This document shows positions 2,975 to 43,822 of a stretch of DNA of 64,000 nt, piece after piece; the stretch's first letter is position 1; each line of letters opens with the position of its first letter. A model generated the notes under the pieces. It was not told the DNA's origin. It worked only from the letters and a program-made list of their open reading frames with translations, and searched no databases. The translations under genes and the position numbers were made by a program. This stretch comes from Pristiophorus japonicus (taxonomy: Eukaryota): NCBI RefSeq assembly GCF_044704955.1, contig NC_091995.1, positions 26,908,001 through 26,972,000 of the forward strand. The letters run 5' to 3'.

Positions 2975-3320
2975 CAGAAATAAAGAACCTGCATTTATAC
3001 AGGACATTCCAAAGCGCTTCACAAGCCTGTGAAGTACTTATGTTTCTTGTAAGGAAGCGCAGCATCTAAAATTTGTGCACAGCAAGAGCCCACAAACAGC
3101 AAATGAGGTGAATGACTAGTTAATCGATCTTTTTGTAGTGTCGATTGACCAGGACATGAGGAGAACCTCCCTGCTTTTCTTTTGATTGTCACGGGATCTT
3201 TTACGTCCACCTCACTGGGCAATTGAGACCTCGGCGTAATGTTACATTCGATGGTCAGCACCTCTGACAATGCTGCACTCTCTCAGTACTGCAGTCGTGT
3301 CAGCCTGGATTATATGCTGA
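2975..3320 (-). mobile_element. DeuSINE-like SINE, degenerate
   Basis: Reverse-complement match to the SINE core (GGGATCTTTTACGTCCACCT, GCACTCTCTCAGTACTGCA). Confidence 0.6.
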
Positions 3321-3789
3321 AGTGGGGCTTAAACTGAGCGCTCTGTATAATATAAGTCAGGTTTTCCTCTTCGGTGTTGGGTGTACGAGCTGGACTGGAT
3401 GGGAAATGGTGACCATCTTGTGCTTGATTTTGTAACCAGCGTTTCCATGTTTCCCAATGCAAAACAAAGTCTGCCCCCATAAGATTTTATTAAGTTCCTG
3501 TGAAAATTATTTGATTTTTGTGTTACCTCTCCACTGGCTGGCCAGGCAGGTTTACTGTAAACCTATTGTTGTGTGTGTATGATTATATCAATATGTGTCA
3601 ATGTGTGGGGTGGGGAAGTGGGTAGCTTAGTATCATTACACATAGATGGCAGTGTCATTGTGATTAACCACAAACCTCACTGAAAAAGGAGTGAGCTGTG
3701 TGGAGAGAGGCACCATCTTTCCTAAAGGGGACTCGATAAAGTAATAAACGTGACAGATAAGGTAAACATGCAAAATTACGCAGCTGATT

Positions 3790-4100
3790 TCATAGAATGA
3801 ATCATAGAATAGTTACAGCACAAAAGGAGACCATTTGGCCTGTCGAGCTAGTGCTGGCTCTCTGCAAGAGCACCTCACCTTGTCCCACTCCCCCACCCTT
3901 ACCCCGTAGCCTTGCATTTTTTTTCCTTCAGGTACTTATCCAATTCCCTTTTGAAAGCCACGATTGAATCTGCCTCCACCACCCCTTCAGGCAGCGTATT
4001 CCAGATCCTGACCACTCACTGCGTAAAAAAAGGTTTTTCTCACGTCGTCTTTGGTTCTTCTGTGTCCTCTGCTTCTCGGCCCTTCTGCTAATGGGAACAG
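3790..4100 (-). mobile_element. CR1 3' end fragment
   Basis: CATAGAAT repeats (CR1 terminal microsatellite, reverse) followed by ACCACCCCTTCAGGCAGCGTATTCCAGATCC. Confidence 0.65.
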
Positions 4101-5324
4101 TAATAAAAACCTATAAGAGGACGAATTTGTTTTCCTTGTATGGGCTGCATTGATGAATATCGCACTGACAATAGTTGTCCTTACCCACTGCCCGGGTATA
4201 TGGGGAAATCGTGACCCAGGACTTATCGTCCATTCTTGAATTTTTAGATTGGACTGGGGCATATTTCTAGCGGAAATCTCGCAACGTAGCAAGGCTGCCT
4301 CCTTTCAGAGCAGAATTTTACAGCTCATATTTAAAGTCCCTCGTTTCTGCTTTTTAACCACTTGACTCATCAAAGTATCTATAGTTAATGTCAGTTCAGC
4401 ATCGTTTGCAGAAGGGACGCCTGCCTTTCAGTGACTCCATAGCTTTGAGTCAGGAATCTCACTCTCGCCTCTGAGTCAGAAGGTTGTGGGTTCAATCCCA
4501 CCTCCGAGACTTGAGCACGTAACCTGGGCTGACACTCGCAGTGCAGTACTGAGGGAGTGCTTCACTGTCAGAGGTATCATTGAGATCTGAGATTTCAGTG
4601 ATGACCTAAAAAAAAAATGGTTTGTCTTTGATTAACCTCTATTAGAAGGGAACATCTTTTAATATTTTACATTTAAATGAATATTGCACAGTGAGTTGGT
4701 AGATGCAAAAGATCCCACAACATTATTTTGAACAAGACCAGGGGAGTGCTCCTGTATCCAACTCCAGGACCTCCACCTCCACTAAGGTGTCAGCCCTGGC
4801 TCAGTGGGTGTGGGCATCGAGTGGAAGGCTGGCATTTATTGCCCATCCCTAATTGCCCTCTGAGAAGGTGTGTGGTGAGCCTTCTTGAACCGCTGCAGTC
4901 CGTGTTTTTTTTAATTTCAAAATATATTTTATTCATATAAAAATTTGCACAATACATTGGAAGAAAGTTCAGTGCATTTGGATGCAGCCATCAATTCCAT
5001 ACAATACATTTGGATGCTGACGGCAGTTCTGTTCAATTCATTTGCTTGCTTTACATTTCGAGGTACTTTTCAGTACAATCCAGGATACATTGTAATACAG
5101 TCATCAAATTAGTTTACTAGTGGCATTATACGGTACATGAAATGGGTGAGGGTACAGTTAAATTTCTTTGCAACATACATTACCAAACAGAACTTGCATT
5201 ATACATGGCACTACATAGAGCACCATGATCTGAAAAAACCTATGTATACAAATCGTTTCCAAGGACAGCCCGAGGGGAGTTTTATACTGATTCCAGCCCC
5301 TGGGTTTATCGTGGTGGAAGGGCT

Positions 5325-8300: not shown

Positions 8301-8627
8301 AATCACCGCCCAGAACGACCGGTCTGGATGTCGCCAGCAGCAGTGGGAACTGCTGGAGTAAGGCCAGCCGCTCGCTTCTGAGAGGCGAGGCATACACGTT
8401 AATTAGCCTTAGAGGAACATTTTTATACAATACATCTGCTACGAGGAGGCGGCCGCCCAACACCTCCTTAACTTCGGTGATGGTGAAGTGGCCTCCCCGC
8501 AGCAGAATGCTCAGGCCGGAGGAACGGCGATCGTTGCCTCCTGACCAAACGGGTGGTCCATGGGACCACCATTGCGACCACTGCCGGTAACTGCTGGAGT
8601 GCAGCAAGCCGCACTCCTGCAAGAATA
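5325..8627 (-). pseudogene. Tx1 ORF2 (APE-RT-CCHC), frameshifted; N-terminus continues at 19815-19917
   Basis: ORFs 7585..8694, 6146..7630, 6015..6227 and 5325..5993 are consecutive pieces in different frames. Joining 19917-19815 to 8627 restores MGLKIASINMRSIKSTTRCVSTLRYLAKVKADLLFLQECG. Confidence 0.9.
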
Positions 8628-9324
8628 AGAACATAAGAACATAAGAATTAGGAACAGGAGTAGGCCATCTAGCCCCTCGAGCCTGCTCCGCCATTCAACA
8701 AGATCATGGCTGATCTGGCCGTGGACTCAGCTCCACTTACCCGCCCGCTCCCCATAACCCTTAATTCCCTTATTAAATCTATCTATCTGTGACTTGAATA
8801 CATTCAATGAGCTAGCCTCAACTGCTTCCTTGGGCAGAGAATTCCACAGATTTACAACCCTCTGGGAGAAGAAATTCCTTCTCAACTCGGTTTTAAATTG
8901 GCTCCCCCGTATTTTGAGGCTGTGACCCCGAGTTCTAGTCTCCTCGACCAGTGGAAACAACCTCTCTGCCTCGATCTTGTCTATCCCTTTCATTATTTGA
9001 AATTTTTCTATAAGATCACCCCTCATCCTACTGAACTCCAATGAGTAAAGACCCAGTTTACTCAATCTATCATCATAAGGTAACCCCGTCATCTCCGGAA
9101 TCAACCAAGTGAATCGTCTCTGTACCCCTCCAAAGCCAGTATATCCTTCCTTAAGTAAGGGGACCAAAACTGCACGCAGTACTCCAGGTGCGGCCTCACC
9201 AATACCCTATACAGTTGCAGAAGGACCTCTCTGCTTTTGTACTCCATCCTTCTCGCAATGAAGGCCAACATTTAATTTGCCTTCCTGATTACCTGCTGCA
9301 CCTGCAAACTAACTTTTTGGGATT

Positions 9325-9495
9325 CCTGAAAAAAAAACGCTCAATCTCATCTGATCTTGGAAGCTAAGCAGAGTCAGCCCTGGTTAGTACTTGGATGGGA
9401 GACTACCTTGGAATACCAGGTGCAGGAGGTTTACCGTTGGTGGACTTTGATGTCACCCAGGTCGGGTGGCACGATTTAATGTAATCTAAAAGAGT
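9325..9495 (+). mobile_element. 5S rRNA-derived SINE3-like element or chimera with a Tx1-type 3' tail
   Basis: 9325-9432 resembles vertebrate 5S rRNA from about nt 17 to its 3' end (TCTGATCTTGGAAGCTAAGCAG..CCTGGTTAGTACTTGGATGGGAGAC..GGAATACCAGGTGC). The tail GTCGGGTGGCACGATTTAATGT..CTAAAAGAGT matches the Tx1 3' ends at 16584-16637 and 42700-42748. Confidence 0.85.
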
Positions 9496-10430
9496 TTCAT
9501 GCACAAGGACCAATTGTGGAGCACTGGAGGCGTGGCCTATTCAATTGGAGCCCTGCTGCTGAGAGAGGAGCAGCTACCAACTTTTGCTCCTGCCTGGAGT
9601 GAGCCCTGAGACCAGCCCAGGAAGAGAAGGAAGGAAGGGGCTTCACCACCAACTTTCACCCAGAGGGAGAGGAGGAAAAAGCAGAAAACTTACAACTTTT
9701 TACCATTTCTACAAAGAGTTGGAGAGAGGGGGAAAGACCAACAACAACATCCAGTGTGGAAGGAGGGAGACTCTACCATTCTACAGGTGGGTGTGGGTGC
9801 ATTTCCCAAAAAGACTTTGTTGTATCGGTGGGGGGAGGAAAGAAGACCACTGAGGGCCGGAACATCGCGGGGGGTGTGTGTGTGTGGAAAGTGTGTGTGG
9901 GGGCCTTGCTTACAACTAGGCCCCACACACAACTGAACCCCCCCCCCAAATTACCTAGCCTGGGATAGCTGGAGCTACCAGGCTGAAGATTTCTTTTCTT
10001 TAAATACCCATTTTAACATCGTTAGGATTGTGTGACTGGTTGGCTCTAGCTGCCCCAGGTGAAGACATCTTCTCCCCTCACCTGAAGACCACCCCAAAGA
10101 CTATTTGTGTTTTGCCATCTGGGGATTGCACCCACCCACAGCTGCGAGGGGAGACCTGCCCTCGCAGTTACCCCCCCCCTTCCCACCCCCCTCTCTCTTT
10201 CTCTGTTACTCTGTTTCTCCCCTCTCTCTCTGAGACCCCTTTCTCCCAAATTAATTTTTAAAAAAACAATTGAGACAACTGAGCAGAGGGAGCAAGGCCC
10301 CTCCCCAATTGCCAACTAGGGGAGAGGTGTGCCTCGTTAAGGGCTCCTCTGCTCAGTCTTTAGACAAGAGGCCAATTAAGACCATTAAGGCCTGTGACTT
10401 TGGGGTGGGTGTAGCCCTTAAAGGGACCCC

Positions 10431-12527
10431 GTGATGGCGACTCCATCCACGCCGGTGGCAGGGCCAGCAAGGACATATGCGCAGGCGGTGTCCACATCCA
10501 CGGCACCTCCTGCGCCACCCGCTGCCCTGCCACCTTTTCGACTTATTACAAAAAAACACGGGGTCAAGAGCTACACTCACCCCACAATGACCATCGAGGA
10601 GTGCGTGCGGGCGATGGCTGGGGTAGTCGGCCCCTCGGCCATTGTCGCAGCCTCCAAGATGTCTGGAAAGGCCGTGTTCTTCCTGGGGTCGGAGCGGGCG
10701 GTGTCCCTGGCCCTCGAAAAAGGGCTCACGGTGGGCGGGACGTTCCTGCCGGTGGACCCTCTCGAGGCCACCGCGCAGAGGGTCATCGTTTCAAACGTCC
10801 CGCCCTTTGTTCCCGCTGAGCTCCTCCTCCCTCACCTACAACAACTGGGGGAGGTAAGGTCGGGGATCAACCCCATACCGCTCGGCCTCAGGGAGAACAG
10901 CCTGCGCCACATGTTCTCCTTCCGCTGCCAGCTCTTTGTCCGGCTGGCGCGGGAGGAGACGACGGAGGGAAATTTCAATGTGGTGCACGAGGGGACTGCC
11001 TACCGCGTCTTCTGGACGTCGGACGGCGTGCGGTGCCATGCCTGTAGGGAGGTGGGGCATGTTCGTAAGAACTGCCCCGCCTCCAAGGCCGCCAAACCAC
11101 CGAGGGCGGCCAAGGCTGGCGCCGCCGCCACCCCTCCCCCTAGTTGCGTCCGTGTGCCGGGAGCCGTAGGTGCGCGGGCATCGTCGGGGGCCTTTGTTTT
11201 CACGGCCTCCGGCGGGGGGGAGGGAGAGCGTCCGATCGAAAAGAAGGCGCGGAAGAAGACGAGACATCTAGAGGCGGGTCCCCTCAGTGCGCCGGAAAGT
11301 TTGACCACCGCGCTCAGCCCAACCCAGTCACCGGCGAGCGCGGGGTACCCTGAGCCCGTGCTCTTGAACAACACCGCAGAGGGGCCCGGGCGCGGGCAAG
11401 AAAAGGAAAAGGGGGGGGCGGAGCGGGAGGCCTCGGCAGACATGGAGGTCTCGCTGCCTCAGCGCACCTCCAGCATCAAAAGGAGGCGCCGCTCCGTTGA
11501 GGCGGAGGGGGAGCAACATCCCTCCGTGGAGGAGTCGGTGCCCGCCGCGTGTCCCGCGTCCCCCACCAGCGCCCCCAAGCAGCGCCGTAGGCGGGAGGAG
11601 TCTGTCCCCGGGGAGGGTGAGACAGTCGAGGCGGCCCAGCCTCTGCCTCCCGGGGATGGCGTGGAAGATCTGCCTGTCGTGGGGGGCGTGGGGCTCGCGG
11701 AGGAATGCATTGCCGCCGGGCCGGGCGTCCCGGGGACTGAGGCGGGCGAGGCCGAAAAGGCCGAACCTCAGCCCGCCCAGCCAATACCCAACTTCCCCCG
11801 GGAGTCGCTCGACCCGGCAGAAAATGAAATTAATAATTTTAATAATACTGTACATGCTGGGCTGGGGGGTGGCAGCGGGGAGGGGGAGGAACACCCACCC
11901 TCGCCTCTTGCTGTGGAGCTGGAGCACTTGGAGAGCCTGGGGATTTCCTATGGCCGGGTCTCTCCTTGTTCCCCAGTTCCTGGGGCGGAGGGGGAACCCC
12001 TTCCGCTGTCATTTCCCGACCCAGCACCATTTTTAAAAGAGCCCAGTGGGGCCTCCTCTGCCGACGATCCTGGGGGTGGGATCGGGGCAGTGCCAGGGCC
12101 GGTTGGAGCGGCCGGGTCATTTGCCGTACCTTGTGCGGTCGATGGGCCGGTTGCTGGCGGCCACCTCCCGGAGGAGGACGGGGACTCGGTGGGGGACGCG
12201 GGAGAAAATCTCGAGACCACCGCCAGCGAGGCGGTGGATCTGCTCGCGGCCGCCGCCGAGACCATCCTCATTCCTGCAAAGGAACTCCGGGACTTTTTGG
12301 CCCAGAGCTGGGGTCGCTGCAACCAAGCCCGACTGGCCCTGGAAAAATGGTCCCAGCCAGAGCTTATCAAGGGGTCCGTCCGCGCCGCCGTTAAAACCTT
12401 GGCCGCGGGCGGGCCCTTGACAAAGGAGCAGCACCTTGAGCTGCGCGAGCTCGAGGGACTCCTCGCTGGGCTGCGGAGGGAGCGGAGTTCAACAAAAGAC
12501 TCCGCTCCCTCCCCCACAATAGGTTAA
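10431..12527 (+). CDS. Tx1 ORF1 protein (698 aa), open
   Basis: RRM-like N-terminal region (RVIVSNVPPFVP), CCHC zinc knuckle CHACREVGHVRKNC, long acidic/Pro-rich tail; homologous to 38512-40614. Confidence 0.88.
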   Translation: MMATPSTPVAGPARTYAQAVSTSTAPPAPPAALPPFRLITKKHGVKSYTHPTMTIEECVRAMAGVVGPSAIVAASKMSGKAVFFLGSERAVSLALEKGLTVGGTFLPVDPLEATAQRVIVSNVPPFVPAELLLPHLQQLGEVRSGINPIPLGLRENSLRHMFSFRCQLFVRLAREETTEGNFNVVHEGTAYRVFWTSDGVRCHACREVGHVRKNCPASKAAKPPRAAKAGAAATPPPSCVRVPGAVGARASSGAFVFTASGGGEGERPIEKKARKKTRHLEAGPLSAPESLTTALSPTQSPASAGYPEPVLLNNTAEGPGRGQEKEKGGAEREASADMEVSLPQRTSSIKRRRRSVEAEGEQHPSVEESVPAACPASPTSAPKQRRRREESVPGEGETVEAAQPLPPGDGVEDLPVVGGVGLAEECIAAGPGVPGTEAGEAEKAEPQPAQPIPNFPRESLDPAENEINNFNNTVHAGLGGGSGEGEEHPPSPLAVELEHLESLGISYGRVSPCSPVPGAEGEPLPLSFPDPAPFLKEPSGASSADDPGGGIGAVPGPVGAAGSFAVPCAVDGPVAGGHLPEEDGDSVGDAGENLETTASEAVDLLAAAAETILIPAKELRDFLAQSWGRCNQARLALEKWSQPELIKGSVRAAVKTLAAGGPLTKEQHLELRELEGLLAGLRRERSSTKDSAPSPTIG

Positions 12528-12553
12528 GGTAGAGGTTGCACTATGCTTTTGCC

Positions 12554-15500
12554 ATGAAGATAACCATAGCCAGCCTCAACATCAACGGCGGCAGAGGGGC
12601 ACGCCGTAGATTTGACAATTTTTCGCTCCTGCGGGAGGGGAAATATGCGGTGTGCTTCCTGCAAGAAACCCACACCGTTCCGGGAGACGAAGCCACGTGG
12701 CTCCTGGAATGGCAAGGAGAGGTCCGCATGAGCCACCTCACCGCCATTTCTAGTGGGGTGGCCATCTTGCTGGGCCCGCATTTTCAGCCGGAGATCTTGG
12801 GGGTCGAGGAGCCCGTGCCAGGCCGCTTGCTGCACGTAACGGTTCGCCTGGGGGACGTGCCGCTCCATCTCGTGAACGTGTACGCTCCTCAGCCCGGCCC
12901 GCAGCAGACGCGCTTCTTTGAAGAGGTGTCCGCTCTTCTTGGCTCCGTCGACGTCGGCGACTGCATTGTCCTTGGGGGGGATTTTAACTGCACCCTCGAG
13001 GCGAGGGACCGCTCCGGTGCCCCGCAGTGCATGACGGCGATGGAGAAGTTGAGGGACCTGGTCGGGTCCTTCGACTTGGTGGACGTCTGGCGAAATCTCC
13101 ACCCCGACTCCAGCGCCTTTACTTGGGTGAGGCCTGGAGTAGGATGGTCTAGAGTCGACCGCCTTTACGTGTCTCGGGCGTACGTTTCCTGCGTCCCGGC
13201 GGCCTCCATGCGGCCGGTGCTGTGTTCGGACCAGCACCTGGTGTGGGCTGAGCTCGCTTCGCTCCGCGCGAGGACGGGGTCCGCGTACTGGCACTTTAAC
13301 AACCGGCTGCTGGAGGATGTGCGGTTCCAGGACTCATTCCGTCGATTCTGGTCCGACTGGAGAAGGAAGCAGGGGGGCTTCCCCTCCTTGAGGCTATGGT
13401 GGGACGTGGGCAAGGCTCACGTCCGCGTCTTCTGTCAAGAGTACGCGAGGGGGTCGACCAAGAGGCGGGCGGCCAGAGTCGGCGCCTAGAAAAAGCGGTG
13501 CTCGACCTGGAAGCCCGTCTCGGTCAAGTCGTCCAGGACCCGGCCCTGCGGACGGTGTACGAAGCAAAGAAGGCCGCGCTGAAGGGTCCCGAGGCGCGTT
13601 CGTGAGGTCGCGGATCCGGTTCCTGCGGGATCTGGACCGCGGCTCCCCCTTCTTCTACTCGCTGGAAAAAAGGCAGAGTGTCCGTAAGCAGCTCTTGACG
13701 CTGCTGGCCGACGACGGCTCTCTCGTCTCGGATCCGGAGGGCGTCAACAACAGGGCCCGTGAATATTACGGGGCTCTGTTCTCTCCGGATCCGTCCAGCG
13801 AGGAAGCGCGTAGAGTTTTGTGGGAGGACCTGCCGAAGGTCAGCCCGGAGGGCGCCGAAAATCTGGAAGCTCCGCTAAGCCTGGCGGAGCTGACCAGTGC
13901 CCTCGACCGGCTCTCGAGGGGAAAATCCCCGGGGCTGGACGGGCTGACCGTGGAGTTCCACAGGGCGTTCTGGGACGTCCTGGGGAGCGACTATGCGCGG
14001 GTCCTGGGAGAAAGTCTGGCGACCGGGGAGATGCCCCTCTCTTGGTGCAGGGCAGTCATCGTCCTGCTGCCTAAGAAGGGCGATCTCCGCCTCCTTAAGA
14101 ACTGGCGCCCGGTCTCCCTCCTCAGCACGGACTACAAAATCTTCGCCAGGGCGATGTCTGCTCGCCTTGGTGCCGTGCTGGACCACATGATCCACCCCGA
14201 CCAGTCCTACACGGTCCCGGGCCGGACAATCCACGATAACATCCATCTGGTCCGGGACCTCATCCATTGTTCCCAGGAGGCTGGTCTGTCGGTCGCCTTC
14301 CTATCCCTCGACCAAGAGAAGCCGTTCGACAGGGTGGATCACGACTATCTGCTCGGAACTCTGCGCGCTTTCGGGTTCGGGACGCATTTCGTCGCCCGGA
14401 TCCGACTTTTGTACGCCGCCGCGGAGTGTCTGATTAAGGTTAACGGGTCCTTGACGGCGCCCCTTCGCTTTAGGAGAGGGGTGCGCCAGGGATGCCCCAT
14501 GTCCGGCCAGTTATACGCCGTTTGCGTGGAGCCTTTCCTGCGCCTCCTGCGGACGAGGTTGACGGGACTGGCTCTGCAAGGGCCGGGCGTGGAGGTCGTC
14601 CTCTCGGCTTACGCCGATGACGTGCTCCTCGCGGTAGAGGATCCCGCTGACCTGCGGAGGATGCGTGAGTGCCAGGAGATTTACTCGGCCGCGTCCTCCA
14701 CCAGGATCAACTGGGAGAAATGTTCCGGACTCCTGGTGGGTCAGTGGCGGGTGGACTCCCTGTCGGAGGAGCTCAGGCCTTTTGCCTGGAGCACGACCCA
14801 TCTCCTCTATCTGGGAGTCTACCTTAGCCCCGACGAGGGAGCCTGGCCGGCGAACTGGCAGGAGCTGGAGGCCAAGGTCGCCGCTCGCCTAGGGCGCTGA
14901 ACAGGACTGCTCCGAGTGCTGTCCTACAGGGGTCGAGCGCTAGTCATAAACCAGCTAGTGGCCGCAATGTTGTGGTACCGGCTGGTCACTTTGACCCCTC
15001 CCCCTGCGTTTGTCACCAAGATACAGAAGAAGCTGGTGGACTTCTTCTGGAACAACAGGAAGCACTGGGTCTCTGCTGCGATCTTGAGTCTCCCGCTTGA
15101 GGAGGGCGGTCAGTCGTTGGTGTGCATCAGCGCCCAGCTCGCGACTTTCCGTCTTCAGACCCTGCAGAGATACCTTTACGTCGAGCCCCCTCCTAGGTGG
15201 TGCGCTCTGGCGAGGTATTTCTTCCGCCAGCAGCGCGACCTCAATTATGACACGCAGCTCCTGTTTGTGAACTTGGGGGGTGCCAGGACCGCCCTCCGGG
15301 AGCTGCCTGTCTTTTACAGGGAACTCATCAGGGTCTGGAACAAAGTCTCCACCAAGCGCTGCTCTCCACCGGCTGGAGTGGCGGCCGTCCTGCAGGAGCC
15401 GCTGCTCGGGAATCCGTACCTCCACGACCGACGTTTTATGTGGCGGTTCAAAGAGAGGGCTGTGGCTGGTGAGGTGACCAGGGTCAGGGACCTGCTCGAT

Positions 15501-16435
15501 GGCGGAGGTGCGGGCTGGATGGCGACAGACACGATGGCGCGGCGCCTAAATTCTGCCAACGTCCGCCACGCGGCCGATGCCATCGAGTCGCTAAAAACAG
15601 CTCTGGGCCCTGACTCCGTTAGGTGCATCGAGGAGGCTCAAGCACGTGGGGAGATCCCGTCCGAACTGACCCCCGTCCGGACGGAATTCCTCATCGGCGC
15701 CAAACCCTGGAACCTCCCTTGGGGGCCGGCGCCTCACAACTTGATACGCCTCGGGGAAACCCCTCCGCGCGGAACTGAAAGGCACGGAGGGGTTTCCTGT
15801 CCGGGCTGCTCCTGCACACTCTCAACTTTGCCATCCTCGCCGGCCATCCGGACACGCCATGGCGTACCATCTTGCCGTCCGGAGGAGGCGGCGGTCCCCG
15901 ATGGAGGGCACTCTACGCAGGGGTCCTCCCACTATTCATCGGGGACTTGGCCTGGAGGGTGGTGCACAGAGCAGTGCCGTGCAACAAATTTTTAAGCCGG
16001 TTCACGGACTCCCAGGCCGCCTGCAATTTCTGCGGTCTGGAAGAGTCCGTGTTCCATGTTTTTATGGAATGTACAAGGTTGCAGCCCCTGTTTTATTATT
16101 TGAAGGGGCTGCTCCTGAAATTCTGGCTGAACTTCAGTCCCACTCTCCTGATCTTTGGGCACCCTGTGCGAAGGGGAGCGGGTAGGTCCGAAGGCCTCCT
16201 CGTAGGACTGCTCCTGGGCACGGCCAAGGGTGCCATCAGCCGGTCCAGGCAGCGGGCGGTCGAGGGGGTCGTTCAACCTGACTGCCTGCCTCTCTTCCGC
16301 TCTTACATCCGGTCCAGGGTGTCCTTGGAGATGGAGCACGCGGTGTTCACCGGTACGCTCGCGGCCTTCCGCGAGAGGTGGGCACCGGAGGGACTGGAGT
16401 GCATCATCACGCCCGGCAACCAAATTTTAATTTGA
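12554..16435 (+). pseudogene. Tx1 ORF2 (APE endonuclease, RT, zinc finger) with few disruptions
   Basis: MKITIASLNING, FLQETH, GGDFNC, SRVDR; RT PGLDGL, WRPVSLL, GVRQGCP, AYADD; C-terminal CNFCGLEESVFHVFMEC. Broken by indels near 13480-13600, TGA at 14898-14900 and a micro-inversion/frameshift near 15760. Confidence 0.93.
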
Positions 16436-19009
16436 TTTTACGTTTTAAAGTTTAATTTGTTTTAAATGCCGATGCTTTTAGTGTCCCCTTCCCTTTTATA
16501 GGGGGCACTGGAAAATTGTGATTTTAGTGCCCAAACAAAAAAAGAAAAACTCAAAAAAAAAGGAAAAAAAGGGCCTTGTAAATGTCGGGTGGCACGATTT
16601 AATGTTTTATGTTTTTGCAGGTAGACTCTAAAAAAGTTTCATGCACAAGGAACCCCAGGTCCCTTTGCACCGCAGCATGTTGTAATTTATCCCCATTCAA
16701 ATAGTATTCCCTTTTTTTGTTTTTTTCCCTAAGGTGGATGACCTCACACTTTCCGACATTGTATTCCATCGGCTAAACCTTAGCCCATTCGCTTAACCTA
16801 TCTAAATCTCTTTGCAGCCTCTCTGTGTCCTCTACACAACCCGCTTTCCCACTAATCTTTGTGTCATCTGCAAATTTTGTTACACTACACTCTGTCCCCT
16901 CTTCCAGGTCATCTATATATATTGTAAACAGTTGTGGTCCCAGCACCGATCCCTGTGGCACACCAATAACCACCGATTTCCAACCTGAAAAGGACCCATT
17001 TATCCCGACTCTCTGCTTTCTGTTAGCCAGCCAATTCTCTATCCGTGCTAATACATTTCCACTGACTCCGCGTACCTTTATCTTCTGCAGTAACCTTTTG
17101 CGTGGCACCTTATCGAATGCCTTTTGAAAATCTAAATACACCACATCCATCGGTACACCTCTATCCACCATGCTCGTTATATCCTCAAAGAATTCCAGTA
17201 AATTAGTTAAACATGATTTCCCCTTCATGAATCCATGCTGCATCTACTTGATTGCACTATTCCTATCTAGATTTCCCGCTATTTCTTCCTTAATGATAGT
17301 TTCAAGCATTTTCCCCACTACAGATGTTAAACTAACCGTCCTATAGTTACCTGCCTTTTGTCTGCCACCCTTTTTAACCAGAGGCATTACATGAGCTGCT
17401 TTCCAATCCAGAGTCCAGAGAATTTTGGTAGATTATAACGAATACATCTACTCTAACTTCCGCCATCTCTTTTAATACCCTGGGATGCATTTCATCAGGA
17501 CCAGGGGACTTGTCTGCCTTGAGTCCCAATAGCCTGTCCCCCTAGTGATAGTGATTGTCTTCAGGTCCTCCCTTCCCACATTCATGTGACCAGCAATTTC
17601 TGGCACGGTTTTTGTGTCTTCCACTGTGAAGACCGAAGCAAAATAATTGTTTAAGGTCTCAGCCATTTCCACATTTCCCATAATTAAATCCCCCTTCTCA
17701 TCTTCTAAGGGATCAACATTTCCTTTTGTCATTCTTGTCCGTTTTATATATCTGTAAAAGCTTTTACTATCCGTTTTTATGTTTTGCGCAAGTTTAGCTT
17801 CGTAATCTATCTTTCCTTTCTTTATTGCTTTCTTAGTCATTCTTTGCTGTCGTTTATAATTTTCCCAATCTTCTATTTTCCCACTAACCTTGGCCACCTT
17901 AAACGCATTGGTTTTTAATTTGATACTGACCTTAATTTCCCTGGTTATCCACGGCTGGTTATCCCTTCTCTTACCGCCCTTCTTTTTCATTGGAATATAT
18001 TTTTGTTGAGCACTATGAAAGAGCTCCTTAAAAGTCCTCCACTGTTCCTCAATTGTGCCACCGTTTAGTCTATGTTTCCAGTCTACTTTAGCCAATTCTG
18101 CATTCATCCCACTGTAGTCCCCTTTGTTTAAGCATAGTATGCTCGTTTGAGACACTACTTCCTCACCCTCAATCTGTATTACAAATTCAACCATACTGTG
18201 ATCACTCATTCCAAGAGGATCTTTTATTAGGAGATTGTTTATTATTCCTGTCTCATTACACAGGACTAGATCTAAGATAACTTGCTCCCTTGTCGGTTCT
18301 GTAACATACTGTTCTAAGAAACAATCCCGTATGCATTCTATGAATTCCTCCTCCAGGCTACCCCGTGCGATTTGGTTTGACCAATCGATATGTTGGTTAA
18401 AATCCCCCATGATTACTGCCGTTCCTTTTTCACATGCCTCCATTATTTCCTTGATTATTGCCCACCCCACCGTGAAGTTATTATTTGGGGGCCTATAAAC
18501 TACGCCCACCAGTAACTTTTTCCCCTAACTATCTCTAATCTCCACCCACAATGATTCAACATTTTGTTCATTGGAGCCAATATCGTCTCTCACAACTGCC
18601 CTGATATCATTCTTTATTAACAGAGCTACCCCACCTCCTTTCCCTTCTTGTCTATCTTTCCGAATCGTCAGATACCCCTGCATGTTTTAATACCAGTCTT
18701 GGCCACCCTGCAACCACGTTTCTGTAATGGCCACCAAATCATACCCATTTGTAATGATTTGTGCCGTCAACTCATTTACTTTATATTGAATGCTGCATGC
18801 GTTTAGGTGGAGTGTTTTACTACTAGTTTTTAATCCATGATTTTTAGGTTTGACCCCTCCTGTAGCCCCTTTACATTCAGTGGCCCTTTTTGTTTTTTGC
18901 CTTGGGTTTCTCTGCCCTCCACTTTTACTCATCTCCTTTCTGTCTTATGCTTTTGTCTCCATTTTGTTTCCCTCTGTCTACTTGCATTGGTTCCCATCCC
19001 CCTGCCACA

Positions 19010-35189: not shown

Positions 35190-37456
35190 CTAAAATATAA
35201 ATGAGTGAATCAGAACAGTTTACACTTTATTTACAATTCTTTTTAAATAATACAATTCAACCATGTTCCCGCTTGTTAAAGGGACACAACCACTCGAACC
35301 TGCAAGCTAACCAAAAACGTTTCAGAAAACCGAACAAATCAAATTACACACAATATTACAGGTGGGGTTTAATCATTACACAAACAGTGGCAGCTGTGTA
35401 AATGAATCCACTTCTCCCCATGGCAACAGATGCTGCTAACTTTGACCCCTCTCACCTTCACTATTTAAAGTGTGTCAGTGTCTTTGTTGGTAATCTTCAG
35501 CAGCTCACCAACGGTTGCCCAGTCAGCCCATGTAAACAAGAGAAGATCAGAAGTACAGGAGGAGCAGGAGTAGGTCATTTGGCTCTGCCATTCAATAAGA
35601 TCATGATCTGATTATAGGCTCAGCTCCACTGCCCTGCCTGCCTTATACCCTTATCACTCAAAAATCTGTCTATCTCTGCCTTAAATATATTCAATGACCC
35701 AGCCTTCACATCTCTCTGGGGCAGAGAATTCCATAGATTTACAACCTGCTGAGAAGAAATTTCTCCTCATTTCAGTTTTAAAAGGGGGCCTCTATGACTA
35801 TGGGCTCGATTTTCCCCATTCATTTGCACCGCTTTTTTGGCGTATTTATTTTTTTCAATGTTTCTCCTGCGATCTGCACTGGCGTAGCTGACTTAGTTAC
35901 TATTTTTCTAGGCCAGTTTTCTTTTACGTCATTCCCTCATTCCCTCATGTCTGGGCCGTTTTTTTTCAATTGTTCGCAGTTTGGCCAAAATATTTTTCTC
36001 TTAGGTATTTGGCCACTCCTGAAAACCCTTCTGGTGAGTTAAGACAACCAGCGCACATTTACAAATCTGCGCTGAAAGATGCCATTGTTTTTAAATCGAA
36101 GATTTTGGAGGGAGTCAAGAACACTGTCAAAATCAATAATAAAGTTCAACTTTTCTTTTTTACCTGTTAATGTAGAAGTGTAAATTTGTTGGATTTCAGA
36201 AGTTCTCTCATTTTTTAAACTTATTCACATGCCACCAGCGAACGCCTTGAGACAGGGCTGGAGGTCGGAGGTTTGGCCGGCAGAATCGGCCCCGTGCCCG
36301 GTCACAGAGGCTCGGCTACAAAACAAGCCATGGGGGGAAGGAGAGAGAGAGAGAGCGAGGTGCTGATTGGAAGGCTTGGAGCCCGGGGAGAGGGAGGGAG
36401 AGAGAGAGAAATCACAAGAATCCAATTAGTAAAGGGGGTGGGGGGAGGAAAGAGGAGAGAGAGAGGTGTCGATTGGAAGGCTTGGAGCCCGGGGAGGGGG
36501 AGGGAGAGAGAGAAGTCACAAGACTTCAATTTAGGGTGAGGGGGAAGAGAGGAGAAGTCACAAGACCGTTGAGTGTGGTCCACCAATACAGACCTGGAGA
36601 GATACAACTGCGAACCTGTGCTGCCTGCTTTCCTACGTTTTGAGCTTCTTTCAAAGGTTAAATTTAAGTATGGGGGCAATACTGACAATGTCATTCCTTG
36701 TGCGAGCCTTGTGCATCATGGTGCTACATAGGAGACATAAGAACATAAGAACTAAGAATTAGGAACAGGAGTAGGCCATCGAGCCTCTCGAGCCTGCTCC
36801 GCCATTCAGTAAGATCATGGCTGATCTGGCCGTGGACTCAGCTCCACTTACCCGCCCTCTCCCCGTAACCCTTAATTCCCTTATTGGTTAAAAATCTATC
36901 TATCTGTGATTTGAATATATTCAATGAGCTAGCCTCAACTGCTTCCTTGGGCAGAGAATTCCACAGATTCACAACCCTCTGGGAGAAGAAATTCCTTCTC
37001 AACTCGGTTTTAAATTGGCTCCCCCGTATTTTGAGGCTGTGCCCCCCAGTTCTAGTCTCCCCAACCAGTGGAAACAACCTATCTGCCTCTATCCTGTCTA
37101 TCCCTTTCATTATTTTAAATGTTTCTATAAGATCACCCCTCATCCTTCTGAACTCCAACGAGTAAAGACCCAGTCTACTCAATCTATCATCATAAGGTAA
37201 CCCACTCATCTCCGGAATCAGCCTAGTGAATCGTCTCTGTACCCCCTCCAAAGCTAGTATATCCTTCCTTAAGTAAGGTGACCAAAACTGCACGCAGTAC
37301 TCCAGGTGCGGCCTCACTAATACCCTGTACAGTTGCAGCAGGACCTCCCTGCTTTTGTACTCCATCCCTCTCGCAATGAAGGCCAACATTCCATTCGCCT
37401 TCCTGATTACCTGCTGCACCTGCAAACTAACCTTTTGGGATTCATGCACAAGGACC

Positions 37457-37556
37457 AACCACAAAAAAAAGAAGAAAAAAAGGGCATTGTAAATGTAGGT
37501 GTTTCCCCCAGATCGGGGGGCACGGTTTAATGTTTTTTGTTTACTCCTAAAAGAGT
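37457..37556 (+). mobile_element. 100-bp 5'-truncated 3' tail of the CR1-targeting Tx1
   Basis: Near-identical to 42650-42748; flanked by TTCATGCACAAGGACC (37441-37456) and TTCATGTACAAGGACC (37557-37572). Confidence 0.9.
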
Positions 37557-38511
37557 TTCATGTACAAGGACCAATGGTGGAGCTTTGGAGGCGTGGCCTA
37601 ATGAGTTGGAGCCGTGAGCAGTGAGAGAAGGAGCTGCTGCTTTTGCTCCTGTCTGGGAGGCCTTTGAGAGCCCTGAGACCAGCCCAGGAAGAGGAGGAAG
37701 GAAGGGGCTTGCTACAATTCAACATCCGTAGGGAGAGGAGGAGAGCTGAAAAATTTATTATTTACTACAACTACAGAGAGTTGGAGAGAGGGGAAAAAAA
37801 CAACCTGAGGAAAAACCATCCAGTGTGGAAGGAGGGAGAGTCATTTCCACATCTTCGACAGGTGGGTGTGTTTTGGTTCATTCCCCAAAAGACTTTGTTG
37901 TATCGGTGGGGGGAGGAAAGAAGATAACTTGAGTGCCAGAACATCGCGGGGGGTGTGTGTGTGTGGAAGTGTGTGTGGGGGTCTTGCTTACAGCTAGGCC
38001 CCACACACCACCGAAGAACCCCTCCCCCATTGCCTAGCCTGGGATAGCTGGAGCTACCTGGCTGAAGAATCTTTAATCACCCTATTGAACATCGTTGGGA
38101 GTGTGTGCCTGGGTGGCTCCAGCTACCCCAGGTGAAGACATCTTCTCCCCCCACCCGAAGACCACTCTCCAAAGACTGTGTTTTTTGCCATCTGGGGAGT
38201 GCACCCCAAGAAACACCCACCCACCGCTGTGAGGGGAGACCTGCCCTCGCAGCCTCCCTCCTTCCCAACCCCTCCCTCTATCTCTCTCTCTCTGTCCCTC
38301 CCCTCTCTCTCTGAGAGCCCTTTCCTCCTAATTTCTTTTAAAAAAACCAATGAAGACAACTGAGCAGAGGGTGCAAGGCCCCTCCCCAATTGCCAACTAG
38401 GGGAGAGGTGTGCCTCTTTCAGAGCTCCCTCTGTTCAAATATTCAAACGAAGCCACTTAAGACCATTAAGGCCTGTGACTTTGGGGTGGGTGTGGCCCTT
38501 AAAGGGACCCC

Positions 38512-40614
38512 ATGATGGCGACCCCATCCACGCCAGTGGCAGGGCCAGCTAGGACATATGCGCAGGTGGCGTCCACATCCACGGCGCCTCCTGCGCCTCC
38601 TGCTGCCCTGCCACCATTCAGACTGATAACTAAAAAACACGGGGTCAAGAGCTACACTCACCCCACAATGAGCATTGAGGAGTGCGTGCGGGCGGTGGCC
38701 GGGGTAGTCGGCCTCTCAGCCATTGTCGCGGCCTCCAAGATGTCTGGGAAGGCCGTGTTCTTCCTGGGGTCGGAGCGGGCCGTGTCCCTGGCCCTCGAAA
38801 AGGGGCTCACGGTGGGCGGGAGGTTCCTGCCGGTGGACCCTCTCGAGGCCACCGCGCAGAGGGTCATCATTTCAAACATCCCGCCCTTTGTTCCCGCTGA
38901 ACTCCTCCTCCCTCACCTACACCAACTGGGGGAGGTAAGGTCGGGGATCAACCCCATACCGCTCGGCCTCAGGGAGAGCAGCCTGCACCACGTGTTCTCC
39001 TTCCGCCGCCAGCTCTTTGTCCGGCTGGCGCGGGAGGAGACGACGGAGGGCTATTTTAATGTGGTGCACGAGGGGACTGCCTACCGCGTCTTCTGGACGT
39101 CGGACGGCGTGCGGTGCCATGCCTGCAGGGAGGTGGGGCACGTTCGCAAGAACTGCCCCGCCTCCAAAGCCACCAAACCACCGAAGGCGGCCAAGGCTGG
39201 CGCCGCCGCCACCCCTCCCCCTAGTAGCGTCCGCGTGCCGGGAGCTGTGGGTGCGCGGGCATCGTCGGGGGCCTTTGTTTTCACGGCCTCCAGCGGGGGG
39301 GAGGGAGAGCGTCCGATCAGAAGGAAGGCGCGGAAGAAGGCGAAACATCTGGAGGCAGGTCCCCTCGGTGCGCCAGACAATCTGTTTATCGCGCTCAGCC
39401 CAACCCCGTCACCGGCGAGCGTGGGGTGCCCTGAGCCCGTGCCTGAACCCTCGATCAATACTACAGAGGGGTTCGGGCACGGGCATGATAAGGAAAAGGG
39501 GGGAGTGGAGCGGGAGGCCTCGGCAGACATGGGGGTCTCCCTGCCTCCGCTCCCCCCCAGGAACAAAAGGAGGCACCGCTCGAATGAGACGGAGGGGGAA
39601 CAACATCCCTCCGCGGAGGAGTTGGTGCCCGCCGCGTGTCCCGCGTCCCCCACCAGCGCCCCCAAGCTGCGCTGTAGGCGAGAGGAGTCTGTCCCCGGGG
39701 AGGGTGAGACAGTCGAGGCTGCCCAGCCGCTGCCTCCCGGGGATGGCGTGAAATATCTGCCTGTCGTGGGGGGCGTGGGACCAGCGGAGGAGTGCATCGC
39801 CGCCGGGTCGAGCGTCCCGGGGACTGAGGCGGGCAGGGCCGAAAAGGCCGAACCTGAGCTCGCCCAGCTATTAACCAACTTCCCCCAGGTTTCGCTCGGC
39901 CCGGAAGAAACGGAAATTTTGAATTTTAATGATTCTGTACACGCTGGGCCGGGGGGTGGCAGCGGGGAGGGGGAAGAACAACAACCCTCGCCCCCTACTG
40001 TGGAGCTGAGGGACTTGGTGGACCTAGAGAATTTCCTAAACCAGGTCTCTCCGTGTTCCCCGGCTCCTGGGGCGGAGGAGGAACCCCTTCCGCTGTCGCT
40101 TCCCGACCCAGCACCACTTTTAAAAGAGCCCAGTGGGGACTCCTCTGCCGATGATCCTGGGGGTGGGATCGGGGCAGAGCCAGGGCCGGATGGAGCGGCC
40201 GGGCCGTTTGCCGTTCCTCGTGCGGTCAACGGGCCGGCTGCTGGCGGCGACCTCCCGGGGGAGGACGGGGACTCGGTGGGGGACGCGGGAGAAGATCACG
40301 AGTCCATCGCCAGTGAGGCAGTGGATCTGCTCGCGTCCGCCGCTGAGACCCTCCTCATTCCTGCAAAGGAACTCCGGGACTTTTTGGTCCAGTGCCGGGG
40401 TCGCCGCGACCAAGCCCATCTGGCCCTGGAAAGATGGTCTGAGCCGGTGTTGCTCATCGCTTCCGTCCGCGCCGCCGCTAAAACCATGGCCGCGGGCGGG
40501 CCCTTATCAAGGGCGCAAGGCCTTGAGCTGCGCCGGCTCAAAAAGTTCCTCGCTGGGCTGCTGAAGGAGTGGAGGTCAACAAACGACTCCACTCCCTCCC
40601 CCACAATAGGTTAG
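38512..40614 (+). CDS. Tx1 ORF1 protein (700 aa), open
   Basis: CHACREVGHVRKNC knuckle; colinear with 10431-12527. Confidence 0.88.
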   Translation: MMATPSTPVAGPARTYAQVASTSTAPPAPPAALPPFRLITKKHGVKSYTHPTMSIEECVRAVAGVVGLSAIVAASKMSGKAVFFLGSERAVSLALEKGLTVGGRFLPVDPLEATAQRVIISNIPPFVPAELLLPHLHQLGEVRSGINPIPLGLRESSLHHVFSFRRQLFVRLAREETTEGYFNVVHEGTAYRVFWTSDGVRCHACREVGHVRKNCPASKATKPPKAAKAGAAATPPPSSVRVPGAVGARASSGAFVFTASSGGEGERPIRRKARKKAKHLEAGPLGAPDNLFIALSPTPSPASVGCPEPVPEPSINTTEGFGHGHDKEKGGVEREASADMGVSLPPLPPRNKRRHRSNETEGEQHPSAEELVPAACPASPTSAPKLRCRREESVPGEGETVEAAQPLPPGDGVKYLPVVGGVGPAEECIAAGSSVPGTEAGRAEKAEPELAQLLTNFPQVSLGPEETEILNFNDSVHAGPGGGSGEGEEQQPSPPTVELRDLVDLENFLNQVSPCSPAPGAEEEPLPLSLPDPAPLLKEPSGDSSADDPGGGIGAEPGPDGAAGPFAVPRAVNGPAAGGDLPGEDGDSVGDAGEDHESIASEAVDLLASAAETLLIPAKELRDFLVQCRGRRDQAHLALERWSEPVLLIASVRAAAKTMAAGGPLSRAQGLELRRLKKFLAGLLKEWRSTNDSTPSPTIG

Positions 40615-40639
40615 GTAGAGGTTGCACTATGCTCTTGTC

Positions 40640-42544: not shown

Positions 42545-43822
42545 TTTTATGTTTTTAAGTTAATTTGTTTTAATTGCCGGTGCTTTTAGTGTCCCCCTCC
42601 CCTTTTATCGGGGGCACTTGGAAAAAAATTTGATTATGTGCCCCAAAAAACCCCCCCAAAAAATAAGAAAAAAGGGCCTTGTAAATGTTGGTGTTTCCCC
42701 CAGATCGGGGGGCATGGTTTAATGTTTTTTGTTTACTCCTAAAAGAGTTTCATGCACAAGGACCCCCAGGTCCCGCTGCACCGCAGCATGTTGTAATTTC
42801 TCCCCATTCAAATAACATTCCCTTTCACTGTTTTTTTTTCCAAGGTGGATGACCTCACATTTTCCGACATTGTATTCCATCTGCCAAACCTTAGCCCATT
42901 CGCTTAACCTATCTAAATAATTGATTCGACTTCATCGCATCAGGAATATCAGAGCCCGTAGGGTGCTGGGCAGGAGGCCTTACCCACCTTGGGTATATTG
43001 AGACAGGCATTCATACCTCTACCTGAGTGATGCAGAATGTGTCGAAATGCTGCGTTTCCACAAAGAAGTTGTAAGTGAGATCTGTGAGTTGGTCAAAGCA
43101 GACCTGCAACCTAGAAGCATCAGGAGGACTGCTTTGTCAATTGAAGTGAAGGTTACAGCTGCACTTTCATTCTATGCCTCCGGATCATTTCAAGCTACAA
43201 CTGGGGATGTGTGCGCCGTCTCTCAACATGCAACACATGTCTCCATTTGCCAGGTCACGGCTGCACTGTACGCATGTAGGAATTACTTAATAAAGTTCCC
43301 CATGACCGCCCAAGCAATCCATGACAGGGCTGTCAGTTTCTCCAGGATTGCTGGCTTCCCAAAGTTATGGGATTGCATTGATTGTACCCACATTGCCTTA
43401 CGAGCACCTTTAAAGAATTCCGAGATGTACAGGAACAGAAAACCCTGGCAGCATCCATGATGCGTTCATCCTACGCAACAGTATTTTATCTGCCATGTTT
43501 CAACTCAGAGTGGGAAAACAGAGCTTGGTAAGTCAGAGAGTCTTAAGGGTTAATCTCTTTTATACCATTTGGAGGCTGGTGGCAATTGCTAGTAGCCTCT
43601 AAGTAAGATTAACAGTTAAATATTTAGGATTCTTTCAGGCTGAAGTAGAGACAAAAAGCATGTGGGGCGATCCCGTCTGAACTGACCACCGTCCGGATGG
43701 AATTCCTCATCGGCGCCAAGCTACGAAACCTCCCTCGGGAGCCGGCGCCTCACTTGAGCCTCCTCCGGGAAATACCCTCCGTGCCTTTCAGTTCTGCATG
43801 GAGGGGATTCCAGTACGGGCTG

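What the first reader, a model, noticed from the sequence alone, without database searches (positions are those of the whole stretch)
9325..9511. 5S rRNA-headed SINE-like passenger sharing the Tx1 tail and the same CR1 target site
Seen: about 108 nt of 5S-like sequence with A-box (AAGCTAAGCAGAGTC) and C-box (TTGGATGGGAGA) recognisable, an 18-nt linker, a hairpin TGTCACCC-AGGTC-GGGTGGCA, then CGATTTAATGT..CTAAAAGAGT, then the 16-bp target. Known: SINE3 elements have 5S heads and borrow LINE tails, classically of CR1/L2 type. Inference: a site-specific Pol III SINE that parasitises a Tx1 that itself parasitises CR1, i.e. three tiers. An alternative is a one-off template-switch chimera like U6-L1. 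Its left TSD is missing apart from TTC.
Basis: partly seen in the sequence, partly recalled or inferred. Interest (0 to 1): 0.8.

Follow-up and report, generated by a model that had tools for sequence, protein, structure and literature searches.

The report
5S rRNA copy on Tx1 tail
A worn, 5'-shortened copy of a 5S ribosomal RNA joined to the last 45-60 letters of a site-specific Tx1-type jumping gene sits exactly at that jumping gene's landing site inside a CR1 element of a shark genome; it is real and was delivered by the Tx1 machinery, but with one copy in reach it cannot be shown to be a new SINE family.

Summary
Rfam finds a 5S rRNA at 9312-9431 (53.7 bits; real homology from about 9337). 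It is followed by 18 nt, an 8-bp hairpin, a Tx1-type 3' end and the exact 16-nt target, head-to-tail with a 7.1-kb L1/Tx1-type LINE inside a split CR1 copy.

New points:
- **Old 5S head.** It has 1 CpG, while the host CR1 copy has lost only 3 of 17 CpGs and the tail keeps 3 of 3. So the 5S was not fresh cellular 5S rRNA but an already decayed genomic 5S derivative.
- **No Pol III terminator in the tail.** It lacks the T4-T6 runs that all three Tx1 tails in the window carry.
- **Hairpin covaries.** The stem shows a compensatory C-G to A-U change.
- **Linker ambiguous.** It is either diverged Tx1 3' UTR, or 'ACC' plus a Tx1 5' end.

The SINE-family claim could not be tested.

Earlier notes of this scan, on other DNA of the same genome and unchecked by me, describe 5S- and pre-tRNA-Tx1 fusions with other junctions.

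My odds: propagating 5S-headed Tx1 passenger 0.45; one-off template-switch chimera 0.38. The closest precedents are SINEU/Tx1-Mar and 5S/LINE-1 chimeras.

The parts
8622..9322 (-). Left part of the host CR1 copy. This is the 3' half of CR1, antisense to the window, with its (TTCTTATG)n-like 3' end at about 8622-8650.
   Evidence: It is 94.7% identical to the CR1 copy at 36737-37446 and 68-80% to other CR1 copies. The sister copy's minus-strand ORF has CR1 ORF2 C-terminal sequence.
9323..9328 (+). Remnant of the left target copy. It reads TTC, or possibly TTCcTG for TTCATG. Alternatively CCTG is already 5S.
   Evidence: Alignment with empty and filled CR1 sites; sequence.
9329..9337 (+). A9 run at the 5' junction. 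It is either an expansion of the 5S 'GAAC' or extra nucleotides added at 5' joining.
   Evidence: Rfam flags non-canonical pairs here.
9338..9432 (+). 5S rRNA-derived head, 5'-truncated. It has 1 CpG only.
   Evidence: Rfam RF00001, 53.7 bits; CpG counted by eye.
9433..9450 (+). 18-nt linker of ambiguous origin. It is either diverged Tx1 3' UTR (GTTGGTG...), or ACC from the target plus the first ~16 nt of a Tx1b-type 5' end.
9451..9471 (+). Tx1 3'-UTR hairpin: an 8-bp stem with loop AGGTC. One stem pair differs from Tx1b by a compensatory change (C-G to A-U).
9472..9495 (+). Tx1 3' end (CGATTTAATGT...CTAAAAGAGT). It lacks the T-rich segment of the Tx1 tails.
9496..9511 (+). 16-nt target copy TTCATGCACAAGGACC, shared with the 5' side of the next element.
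9512..16637 (+). Tx1a: a 7.1-kb L1/Tx1-type LINE with ORF1, an endonuclease, a reverse transcriptase and zf-RVT. Its frames are broken. Its tail lacks the 5' arm of the hairpin.
   Evidence: Pfam hits. Its best solved relative is human LINE-1 ORF2p, E 2e-46.
16638..16653 (+). Right target copy (TTCATGCACAAGGAAC, 1 mismatch).
16654..17408 (-). Right part of the same host CR1 copy.

Best explanation
This is a dead, 5'-truncated copy of a non-autonomous composite element: a 5S-derived Pol III head joined to the 3' recognition end of the resident site-specific Tx1-type LINE.

Shown:
- The Tx1 endonuclease site in CR1 was used, and the unit ends exactly like a Tx1 at the 16-nt target.
- It carries the Tx1 3' hairpin.
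- The head is far more CpG-decayed than the DNA it was inserted into.

Inferred:
- Because the head is older than its host, the RNA that was copied did not come from fresh cellular 5S rRNA. It came from a 5S derivative that had already spent a long time as methylated genomic DNA.
- The most economical source is an earlier copy of the same kind of unit. That would be a low-copy, propagating 5S-headed passenger of Tx1 (a proto-SINE or SINE3-like lineage).
- Its proposed cycle: TFIIIA/Pol III transcribes it from the internal 5S promoter. Transcription reads through the T3 at the 5S end and through a tail that has lost the T-runs, and stops in the downstream CR1 sequence. The Tx1 ORF2 protein recognises the hairpin, nicks GGGA|TTCATG on the bottom strand and reverse-transcribes the RNA on the target.
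- In this copy reverse transcription or 5' joining stopped about 20 nt short of the 5S start, and the left target copy was trimmed to TTC.

Family status (same junction in many copies) is not shown.
For: - 5S hit and anatomy.
- Same target and orientation as two Tx1 copies and one 100-bp truncated Tx1 tail.
- Partner LINE with EEP, RVT_1 and zf-RVT domains.
- Tail homology is colinear with the Tx1b tail (score 44, 0 of 3000 shuffles as good).
- The 22-nt block is identical to Tx1a.
- Hairpin with a compensatory pair.
- Age discordance. The host CR1 copy lost 3 of the 17 CpGs kept by its sister copy, and Tx1a lost 38 of the 295 CpGs present in Tx1b. CpG observed/expected is 0.47-0.60 in the CR1 flanks, 0.79 in Tx1a and 0.97 in linker plus tail. 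In the head it is about 0.2 (1 CpG, counted by eye).
- None of the 8 CpGs of the Rfam consensus in the aligned stretch is kept.
- If 7 of 8 canonical sites were lost in place, the probability is 3e-6 to 4e-5 at the host's decay rate.
- There is no run of four or more T from 9420 to 9560, whereas all three Tx1 tails have T4-T6.
- The two CR1 hosts are independent insertions. Homology stops at the CR1 3' end and at a 5' truncation point.
Against: - There is only one copy in 64 kb, and no second 5S piece even in permissive scans.
- No genome-wide count was possible.
- Unchecked notes on this genome describe heterogeneous fusions: s1-876471, s1-876603 and s1-878758. These fit recurrent template switching.
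- The count of 7 of 8 lost CpGs rests on my own knowledge of the vertebrate 5S consensus, not on this species' gene.
- The missing T-rich segment lies in a part of the tail that also differs between Tx1a and Tx1b, so it may be ordinary indel noise.
- The copy itself is truncated and cannot show a full-length master.
Confidence: 0.45

Rival explanations
1. One-off by-product of Tx1 reverse transcription. TPRT began on a Tx1 RNA 3' end. After 45-60 nt the enzyme switched template to the 3' end of a Pol III transcript from a decayed variant 5S locus or pseudogene, possibly a read-through pre-5S RNA with a short trailer. The product was never copied again.
For: - The junction lies at the natural 5S 3' end, including TTT.
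- 5S/LINE-1 chimeras are a known class, 10.5% of 253 catalogued chimeric insertions (PMC11838501).
- Tripartite double-jump chimeras are known (PMC2104539).
- Variant pre-5S RNAs that read through the first terminator by 8-10 nt exist and are held by Ro60/La (PMC11277228).
- Unchecked notes report pre-tRNA-Asp plus 12 nt of Tx1, 5S plus 1.4 kb of Tx1, and a 5S dimer plus a spacer-like linker in this genome.
- The element is single-copy in the window.
Against: - Transcripts of decayed 5S pseudogenes should be a very small share of the 5S RNA available as acceptor. Yet the head is heavily decayed relative to its host.
- The tail lacks the T-runs of all three Tx1 tails seen. A random Tx1 donor RNA would usually carry them.
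Confidence: 0.38
2. Two separate Tx1-mediated events at the hot site. First a 'mini-Tx1' landed with full 16-nt duplications. It consisted of the first ~16 nt joined to the last ~45 nt of a Tx1. Later a tail-less 5S-type retrocopy was placed inside the left target copy, leaving TTC on its left and ACC on its right.
For: - The linker reads ACC + TGGTGGA-CTTTG against ACC + TGGTGGAGCTTTG at the Tx1b 5' junction: 12 of 13, in register, matched by 0.2-1.5% of shuffles.
- TTC...ACC are the two ends of the target.
- An unchecked note, s1-879021, describes a 5S retrocopy at the Tx1 junction motif.
Against: - The same letters also align colinearly with the Tx1 3' UTR, starting GTTGGTG 7 of 7.
- Local scores of this size occur by chance elsewhere in the window.
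- The model needs 13-nt trimming on both sides.
- Similarity to the Tx1a 5' end is not significant.
Confidence: 0.1
3. Classic chimera with mature, canonical 5S rRNA, all of whose differences arose after insertion at this locus.
For: This is the simplest analogue of U6/L1 and 5S/L1 chimeras. It has the full 5S 3' end.
Against: - It requires 7 of 8 CpGs to be lost in the head, while the older host CR1 lost 3 of 17 and the adjoining tail 0 of 3.
- Binomial P is 3e-6 to 4e-5; Fisher's test gives 0.002 against the host and 0.024 against the tail.
Confidence: 0.03

Closest known systems
SINEU families mobilised by Tx1-Mar LINEs in crocodilians (Kojima 2015, PMC4494074)
   Same: Both have a small-RNA-derived head and depend on a Tx1-clade LINE. 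Both are inserted preferentially into the same site of another transposon as the LINE, giving the same three-tier arrangement. In both, heads are added by template switching, many copies are 5'-truncated, and stacks occur next to Tx1 copies.
   Different: - The head here is 5S, which has an internal Pol III promoter, not U1/U2.
- The target is a CR1 LINE, not a Mariner DNA transposon.
- Here the 3' end is visibly shared with the LINE, whereas no LINE sharing the SINEU-1 tail was found.
- SINEU is a demonstrated multi-copy family; this is one copy.
SINE3 and other 5S-headed SINEs: SINE3/AmnSINE1 with CR1-type tails, OS-SINE1 with RSg-1, Ped-1 with BovB (table in PMC3747384)
   Same: A 5S-derived head with promoter boxes, followed by a LINE-derived 3' end that the partner's reverse transcriptase would recognise.
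   Different: - The partner is of the L1/Tx1 type and is site-specific. No Tx1 partner appears in that table of 58 SINE/LINE pairs.
- There is no Deu or other central domain.
- Family status is unproven.
5S/LINE-1 and U6/LINE-1 chimeric retrocopies (Buzdin et al. 2003 as cited in PMC11838501; PMC6789731)
   Same: A small Pol III RNA fused 5' of a severely 5'-truncated LINE 3' end, inserted by the LINE machinery.
   Different: - In humans the 5S parts are mostly antisense and truncated at loops C and D. Here the 5S is in sense and reaches its natural 3' end.
- Those chimeras are each unique and copy the functional RNA. Here the 5S part looks older than the insertion.
Internally deleted non-autonomous derivatives of site-specific LINEs (R2 SIDEs; own knowledge, Eickbush and Eickbush 2012)
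   Same: If the linker is a Tx1 5' end, the 63-nt unit is a 5'-end plus 3'-end deletion derivative at the LINE's own target.
   Different: SIDEs keep a functional 5' ribozyme and form families. Here at most 16 nt of 5' end would be kept, and the reading is uncertain.

Membership tests
SINE3 (5S-headed SINE) | 5' head derived from 5S rRNA with internal Pol III promoter (A box, intermediate element, C box) | tested here: met
   Rfam 5S hit at 53.7 bits. The box strings are visible, with a few changes at their edges. The first ~20 nt of 5S are missing in this copy. Promoter activity was not tested.
SINE3 (5S-headed SINE) | 3' end shared with a partner LINE | tested here: met
   Colinear alignment to the Tx1b tail, a 22-nt block identical to Tx1a, and a shared hairpin and last 10 nt.
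SINE3 (5S-headed SINE) | No Pol III terminator between head and 3' end | tested here: met
   T3 only at the 5S end. There is no run of four or more T at 9420-9560, and none is seen by eye in the head.
SINE3 (5S-headed SINE) | Multi-copy family: many dispersed copies with the same head/body/tail junctions | not testable with these tools
Metagenome, viral and prokaryote scans were blank.
SINE3 (5S-headed SINE) | Target-site duplications flanking the whole unit | tested here: inconclusive
   The right copy is complete. The left is reduced to TTC, or to TTCcTG.
LINE-made small-RNA chimera (U6/L1, 5S/L1 type) | Small RNA fused in one event to a 5'-truncated LINE 3' end at a site cut by the LINE endonuclease | tested here: met
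   Anatomy and target. That it was a single event is inferred, not shown.
LINE-made small-RNA chimera (U6/L1, 5S/L1 type) | The small-RNA part is a copy of the functional cellular RNA at the time of insertion | tested here: not met
   The head is CpG-decayed far beyond its older host and its own tail. Caveat: this species' 5S gene was not available.
LINE-made small-RNA chimera (U6/L1, 5S/L1 type) | Each chimera has its own junction and does not propagate | not testable with these tools
   Needs a genome-wide search.
SINEU-like Tx1-dependent target-specific SINE | Same insertion site and orientation as the Tx1 partner inside another transposon | tested here: met
   Empty CR1 sites lie at 55625 and 59006(-).
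Tx1 clade (partner LINE) | APE endonuclease plus RT plus C-terminal zinc domain, two ORFs, sequence-specific insertion; clade placement by RT phylogeny | tested here: inconclusive
   The domains and site specificity are met. The nearest solved relative is LINE-1 ORF2p. No RT tree against named Tx1 families was made.

The most novel reading that the evidence does not exclude
A genuine, Pol III-driven, 5S-headed SINE family that shares the 3' hairpin of a Tx1-clade LINE and inherits its exact landing site inside CR1 copies. It would be the first SINE3-type family with a Tx1 partner and a fixed target. The fixed downstream CR1 sequence would supply both the read-through homology for priming and the Pol III terminator.
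Probability: 0.35. Interest if true: 0.6.

Novelty: new member of a known kind. Interest (0 to 1): 0.4.

Why it matters
If a family exists, it would show how a site-specific LINE recruits a Pol III head to make a target-specific SINE in a cartilaginous fish. It would extend SINE3 to Tx1 partners and give a second, independent case beside crocodilian SINEU.

Even as a single copy it is useful in two ways:
- It marks the minimal Tx1 3' element (hairpin plus about 24 nt) that travels with foreign RNA.
- Comparing CpG decay in the head, the tail and the host can separate fresh template-switch chimeras from copies of older units without any genome-wide data.

Otherwise it is an ordinary by-product of LINE activity.

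Tried and rejected
- **Read depth and other copies.** My scripts worked on a copy with them masked.
- **Exact-pattern scans.** All were blank, as expected for shark DNA.
- **Full-text paper search.** Searching for the target and tail strings found nothing.
- **Findings search by sequence.** It was blank.
- **Segmental duplication of the two CR1/Tx1 loci.** Rejected. Homology stops at the CR1 3' end and at a CR1 truncation point, and divergence is uneven, 5% to 11%.
- **Linker as Tx1 3' UTR alone.** Not significant on its own.
- **Tx1 5' end and 3' tail as terminal repeats.** Not supported.
- **cDNA editing by a deaminase as the cause of the head's G-to-A changes.** Considered. Nearly all the changes are at CpG and on both strands, so methyl-CpG decay is simpler.

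Full report
**What is there**

Rfam places a 5S rRNA at 9312-9431 on the + strand, at 53.7 bits against a gathering score of 38. The first ~25 model positions are forced onto CR1 flank and an A9 run, with non-canonical pairs flagged. The real 5S homology therefore runs from about 9337 to the natural 3' end GGTTT at 9432, and the first 16-25 nt of 5S are absent.

The units that follow are:
- an 18-nt linker (9433-9450);
- a hairpin TGTCACCC-AGGTC-GGGTGGCA (9451-9471), which is the centroid structure when 9432-9495 is folded;
- the string CGATTTAATGTAATCTAAAAGAGT (9472-9495);
- the 16-nt string TTCATGCACAAGGACC (9496-9511).

Each of these pieces is unique in the window. The 16-mer recurs 8 times at up to 3 mismatches, against 0.93 expected.

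**Surroundings**

Directly after the 16-mer comes a 7126-bp LINE (Tx1a, 9512-16637). It has an endonuclease, a reverse transcriptase and a zf-RVT domain. Its closest solved relative is human LINE-1 ORF2p, E 2e-46.

Tx1a ends ...CTAAAAAAGT, followed by TTCATGCACAAGGAAC. A second copy, Tx1b (37573-42748), is 87-92% identical and has a 2-kb internal deletion. It ends ...CTAAAAGAGT + TTCATGCACAAGGACC. Tx1b is preceded by a 100-bp 5'-truncated Tx1 tail with perfect 16-nt duplications.

Both stacks split copies of one CR1 subfamily lying antisense. The CR1 3' repeat is at about 8622-8650, and the sister copy's minus-strand ORF has CR1 ORF2 C-terminal sequence. Unfilled CR1 copies read ...TTCATGCACAAGGACC|CCCAGGTCCC... 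without interruption.

So the LINE is site-specific for CR1, each landing rebuilds the site, and the 5S-headed unit occupies the same site in the same orientation. The left target copy is reduced to TTC. TTCcTG is another possible reading.

**Is the tail a Tx1 tail?**

Yes, in blocks. A local alignment of 9430-9495 with the Tx1b tail is colinear from GTTGGTG through the hairpin to the last base (score 44; none of 3000 shuffles as good). The 22 nt GTCGGGTGGCACGATTTAATGT are identical in Tx1a.

The stem differs from Tx1b by a two-sided change, CACCC/GGGTG against CCCCC/GGGGG. That is what a conserved RNA hairpin would show. The T-rich stretch between AATGT and CTAAAAGAGT is missing. That stretch carries T6 in Tx1b and in the truncated copy, and T4 plus T5 in Tx1a. 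There is no run of four or more T from 9420 to 9560.

**The linker**

Two readings compete.
- (a) It is Tx1 3' UTR with two small insertions. On its own the linker's similarity to the UTR is not significant.
- (b) It is ACC, the last three letters of the target, plus the first ~16 nt of a Tx1b-type 5' end. This gives TGGTGGA-CTTTG against TGGTGGAGCTTTG, in register, matched by 0.2-1.5% of shuffles.

Scores like that of (b) occur by chance elsewhere in the window, so only the exact position makes it notable. Under (b) the 5S sits at the 5' junction of a 'mini-Tx1', and TTC...ACC are the two ends of one split target copy. I could not settle this, because the only Tx1a tail in the window has lost exactly this region.

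**Age test (new here)**

The unit cannot be older than the CR1 copy it interrupts.

That copy and its sister at 36737-37446 are independent insertions. Homology stops at the CR1 3' end on one side and at a 5' truncation on the other. They are 94.7% identical.
- Of 17 CpGs present in the sister, the host has lost 3.
- Tx1a has lost 38 of the 295 CpGs present in Tx1b.

CpG observed/expected values are:

| Region | CpG observed/expected |
|---|---|
| CR1 flanks | 0.47-0.60 |
| Tx1a | 0.79 |
| Linker plus tail (3 CpGs, two in the block shared with Tx1a) | 0.97 |
| 5S head (1 CpG, about 20 C and 27 G in ~98 nt, counted by eye) | about 0.2 |

The head keeps none of the 8 CpGs of the Rfam consensus in the aligned stretch. 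By my own knowledge of the vertebrate 5S sequence, 7 of 8 (or 6 of 7) canonical CpG sites are changed, nearly all to TpG or CpA.

At the host's decay rate, such a loss in place has a probability of 3e-6 to 2e-4. Fisher's tests give 0.002 against the host and 0.02-0.03 against the tail.

Hence the head was already old when it was copied here. The template was not fresh cellular 5S rRNA. It was RNA from a long-resident genomic 5S derivative.

**What this means**

The simple analogue of U6/L1 chimeras, mature 5S plus a LINE tail with everything else happening later, is disfavoured. Two readings remain.
1. The source was an earlier copy of the same composite unit, that is, a propagating 5S-headed passenger of Tx1. 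This fits the old head with recognisable promoter boxes, the conserved CpG-bearing hairpin region, and a tail free of Pol III terminators.
2. The Tx1 reverse transcriptase switched onto a transcript of a decayed variant 5S locus.
   - Variant pre-5S RNAs that read through the first terminator are known (PMC11277228).
   - 5S/LINE-1 chimeras are a known class (PMC11838501).
   - Double-jump chimeras are known (PMC2104539).

I give 0.10 to two separate events at the hot site and 0.03 to the classic chimera.

**What could not be done**

- The protein word search found only two relatives.
- Scans of metagenome, viral and prokaryote collections and of paper texts were blank.
- No stretch written N was filled or looked up. 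The two N runs are at 25981-26146 and 26423-26575.

**Earlier notes of this scan**

These are on the same genome but other DNA, and I did not check them. They report the following:
- the CR1-targeting Tx1 many times;
- three copies of 5S plus 1.4 kb of Tx1 in one pile;
- a 5S dimer with a spacer-like linker;
- a 160-letter 5S retrocopy at the Tx1 junction motif;
- a pre-tRNA-Asp joined to 12 nt of Tx1 tail;
- shark SINEU-like elements.

They show that this scan has met 5S/Tx1 fusions before on other DNA. The junctions vary, which argues for recurrent template switching by this enzyme. Two of the notes could equally be further copies of the present unit.

**Comparison with known systems**

The three-tier arrangement is already described for crocodilian SINEU, Tx1-Mar and Mariner-N4_AMi. 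In that arrangement a small-RNA-headed passenger depends on a Tx1 LINE that targets another transposon. There, template switching also added snRNA heads to SINEs and to Tx1 families (PMC4494074).

5S-headed SINEs are known with CR1, RSg-1 and BovB partners (table in PMC3747384). No Tx1 partner is listed there.

At best this is therefore a new variant of a known kind. As it stands, it is a new member: one Tx1-delivered 5S composite in a shark.

Noticed in passing
window 37457-37556: A 100-bp 5'-truncated Tx1 tail with perfect 16-nt target copies on both sides, head-to-tail with Tx1b. It has the same 'short unit + full-length Tx1' layout as at 9325-16653.
   Followed up: partly
window 37573-42748: Tx1b lacks about 2 kb (Tx1a coordinates 3287-5276, the endonuclease/RT part) but keeps an intact 700-aa ORF1 (38512-40614). 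It may be an internally deleted, non-autonomous Tx1 derivative.
   Followed up: partly
window 16585-16590: The Tx1a tail has lost about 17 nt, including the 5' arm of the 3'-UTR hairpin (GTAAATGT|CGGGTGGCA). This copy could not fold the hairpin.
   Followed up: partly
window 43656-43823 and 46284-46987: Further fragments of a third Tx1 copy, 80-84% identical to Tx1a. They are interrupted or followed by another repeat that begins GAAGTAGAGACAA at both places.
   Followed up: no
window 42560-42612 and 16470-16512: A second G/C hairpin in the Tx1 3' UTR (GTGTCCCCC...GGGGGCAC), about 150 nt upstream of the end. It is conserved between Tx1a, Tx1b and the fragment at 46960-46985.
   Followed up: no
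window 62678-63020: Weak sub-threshold Rfam matches (prion pseudoknot twice, U2 at 27 bits) in one repetitive stretch. Probably chance in low-complexity sequence.
   Followed up: no
window 25981-26146 and 26423-26575: Two runs of N (166 and 153 letters). They were left as they are.
   Followed up: no
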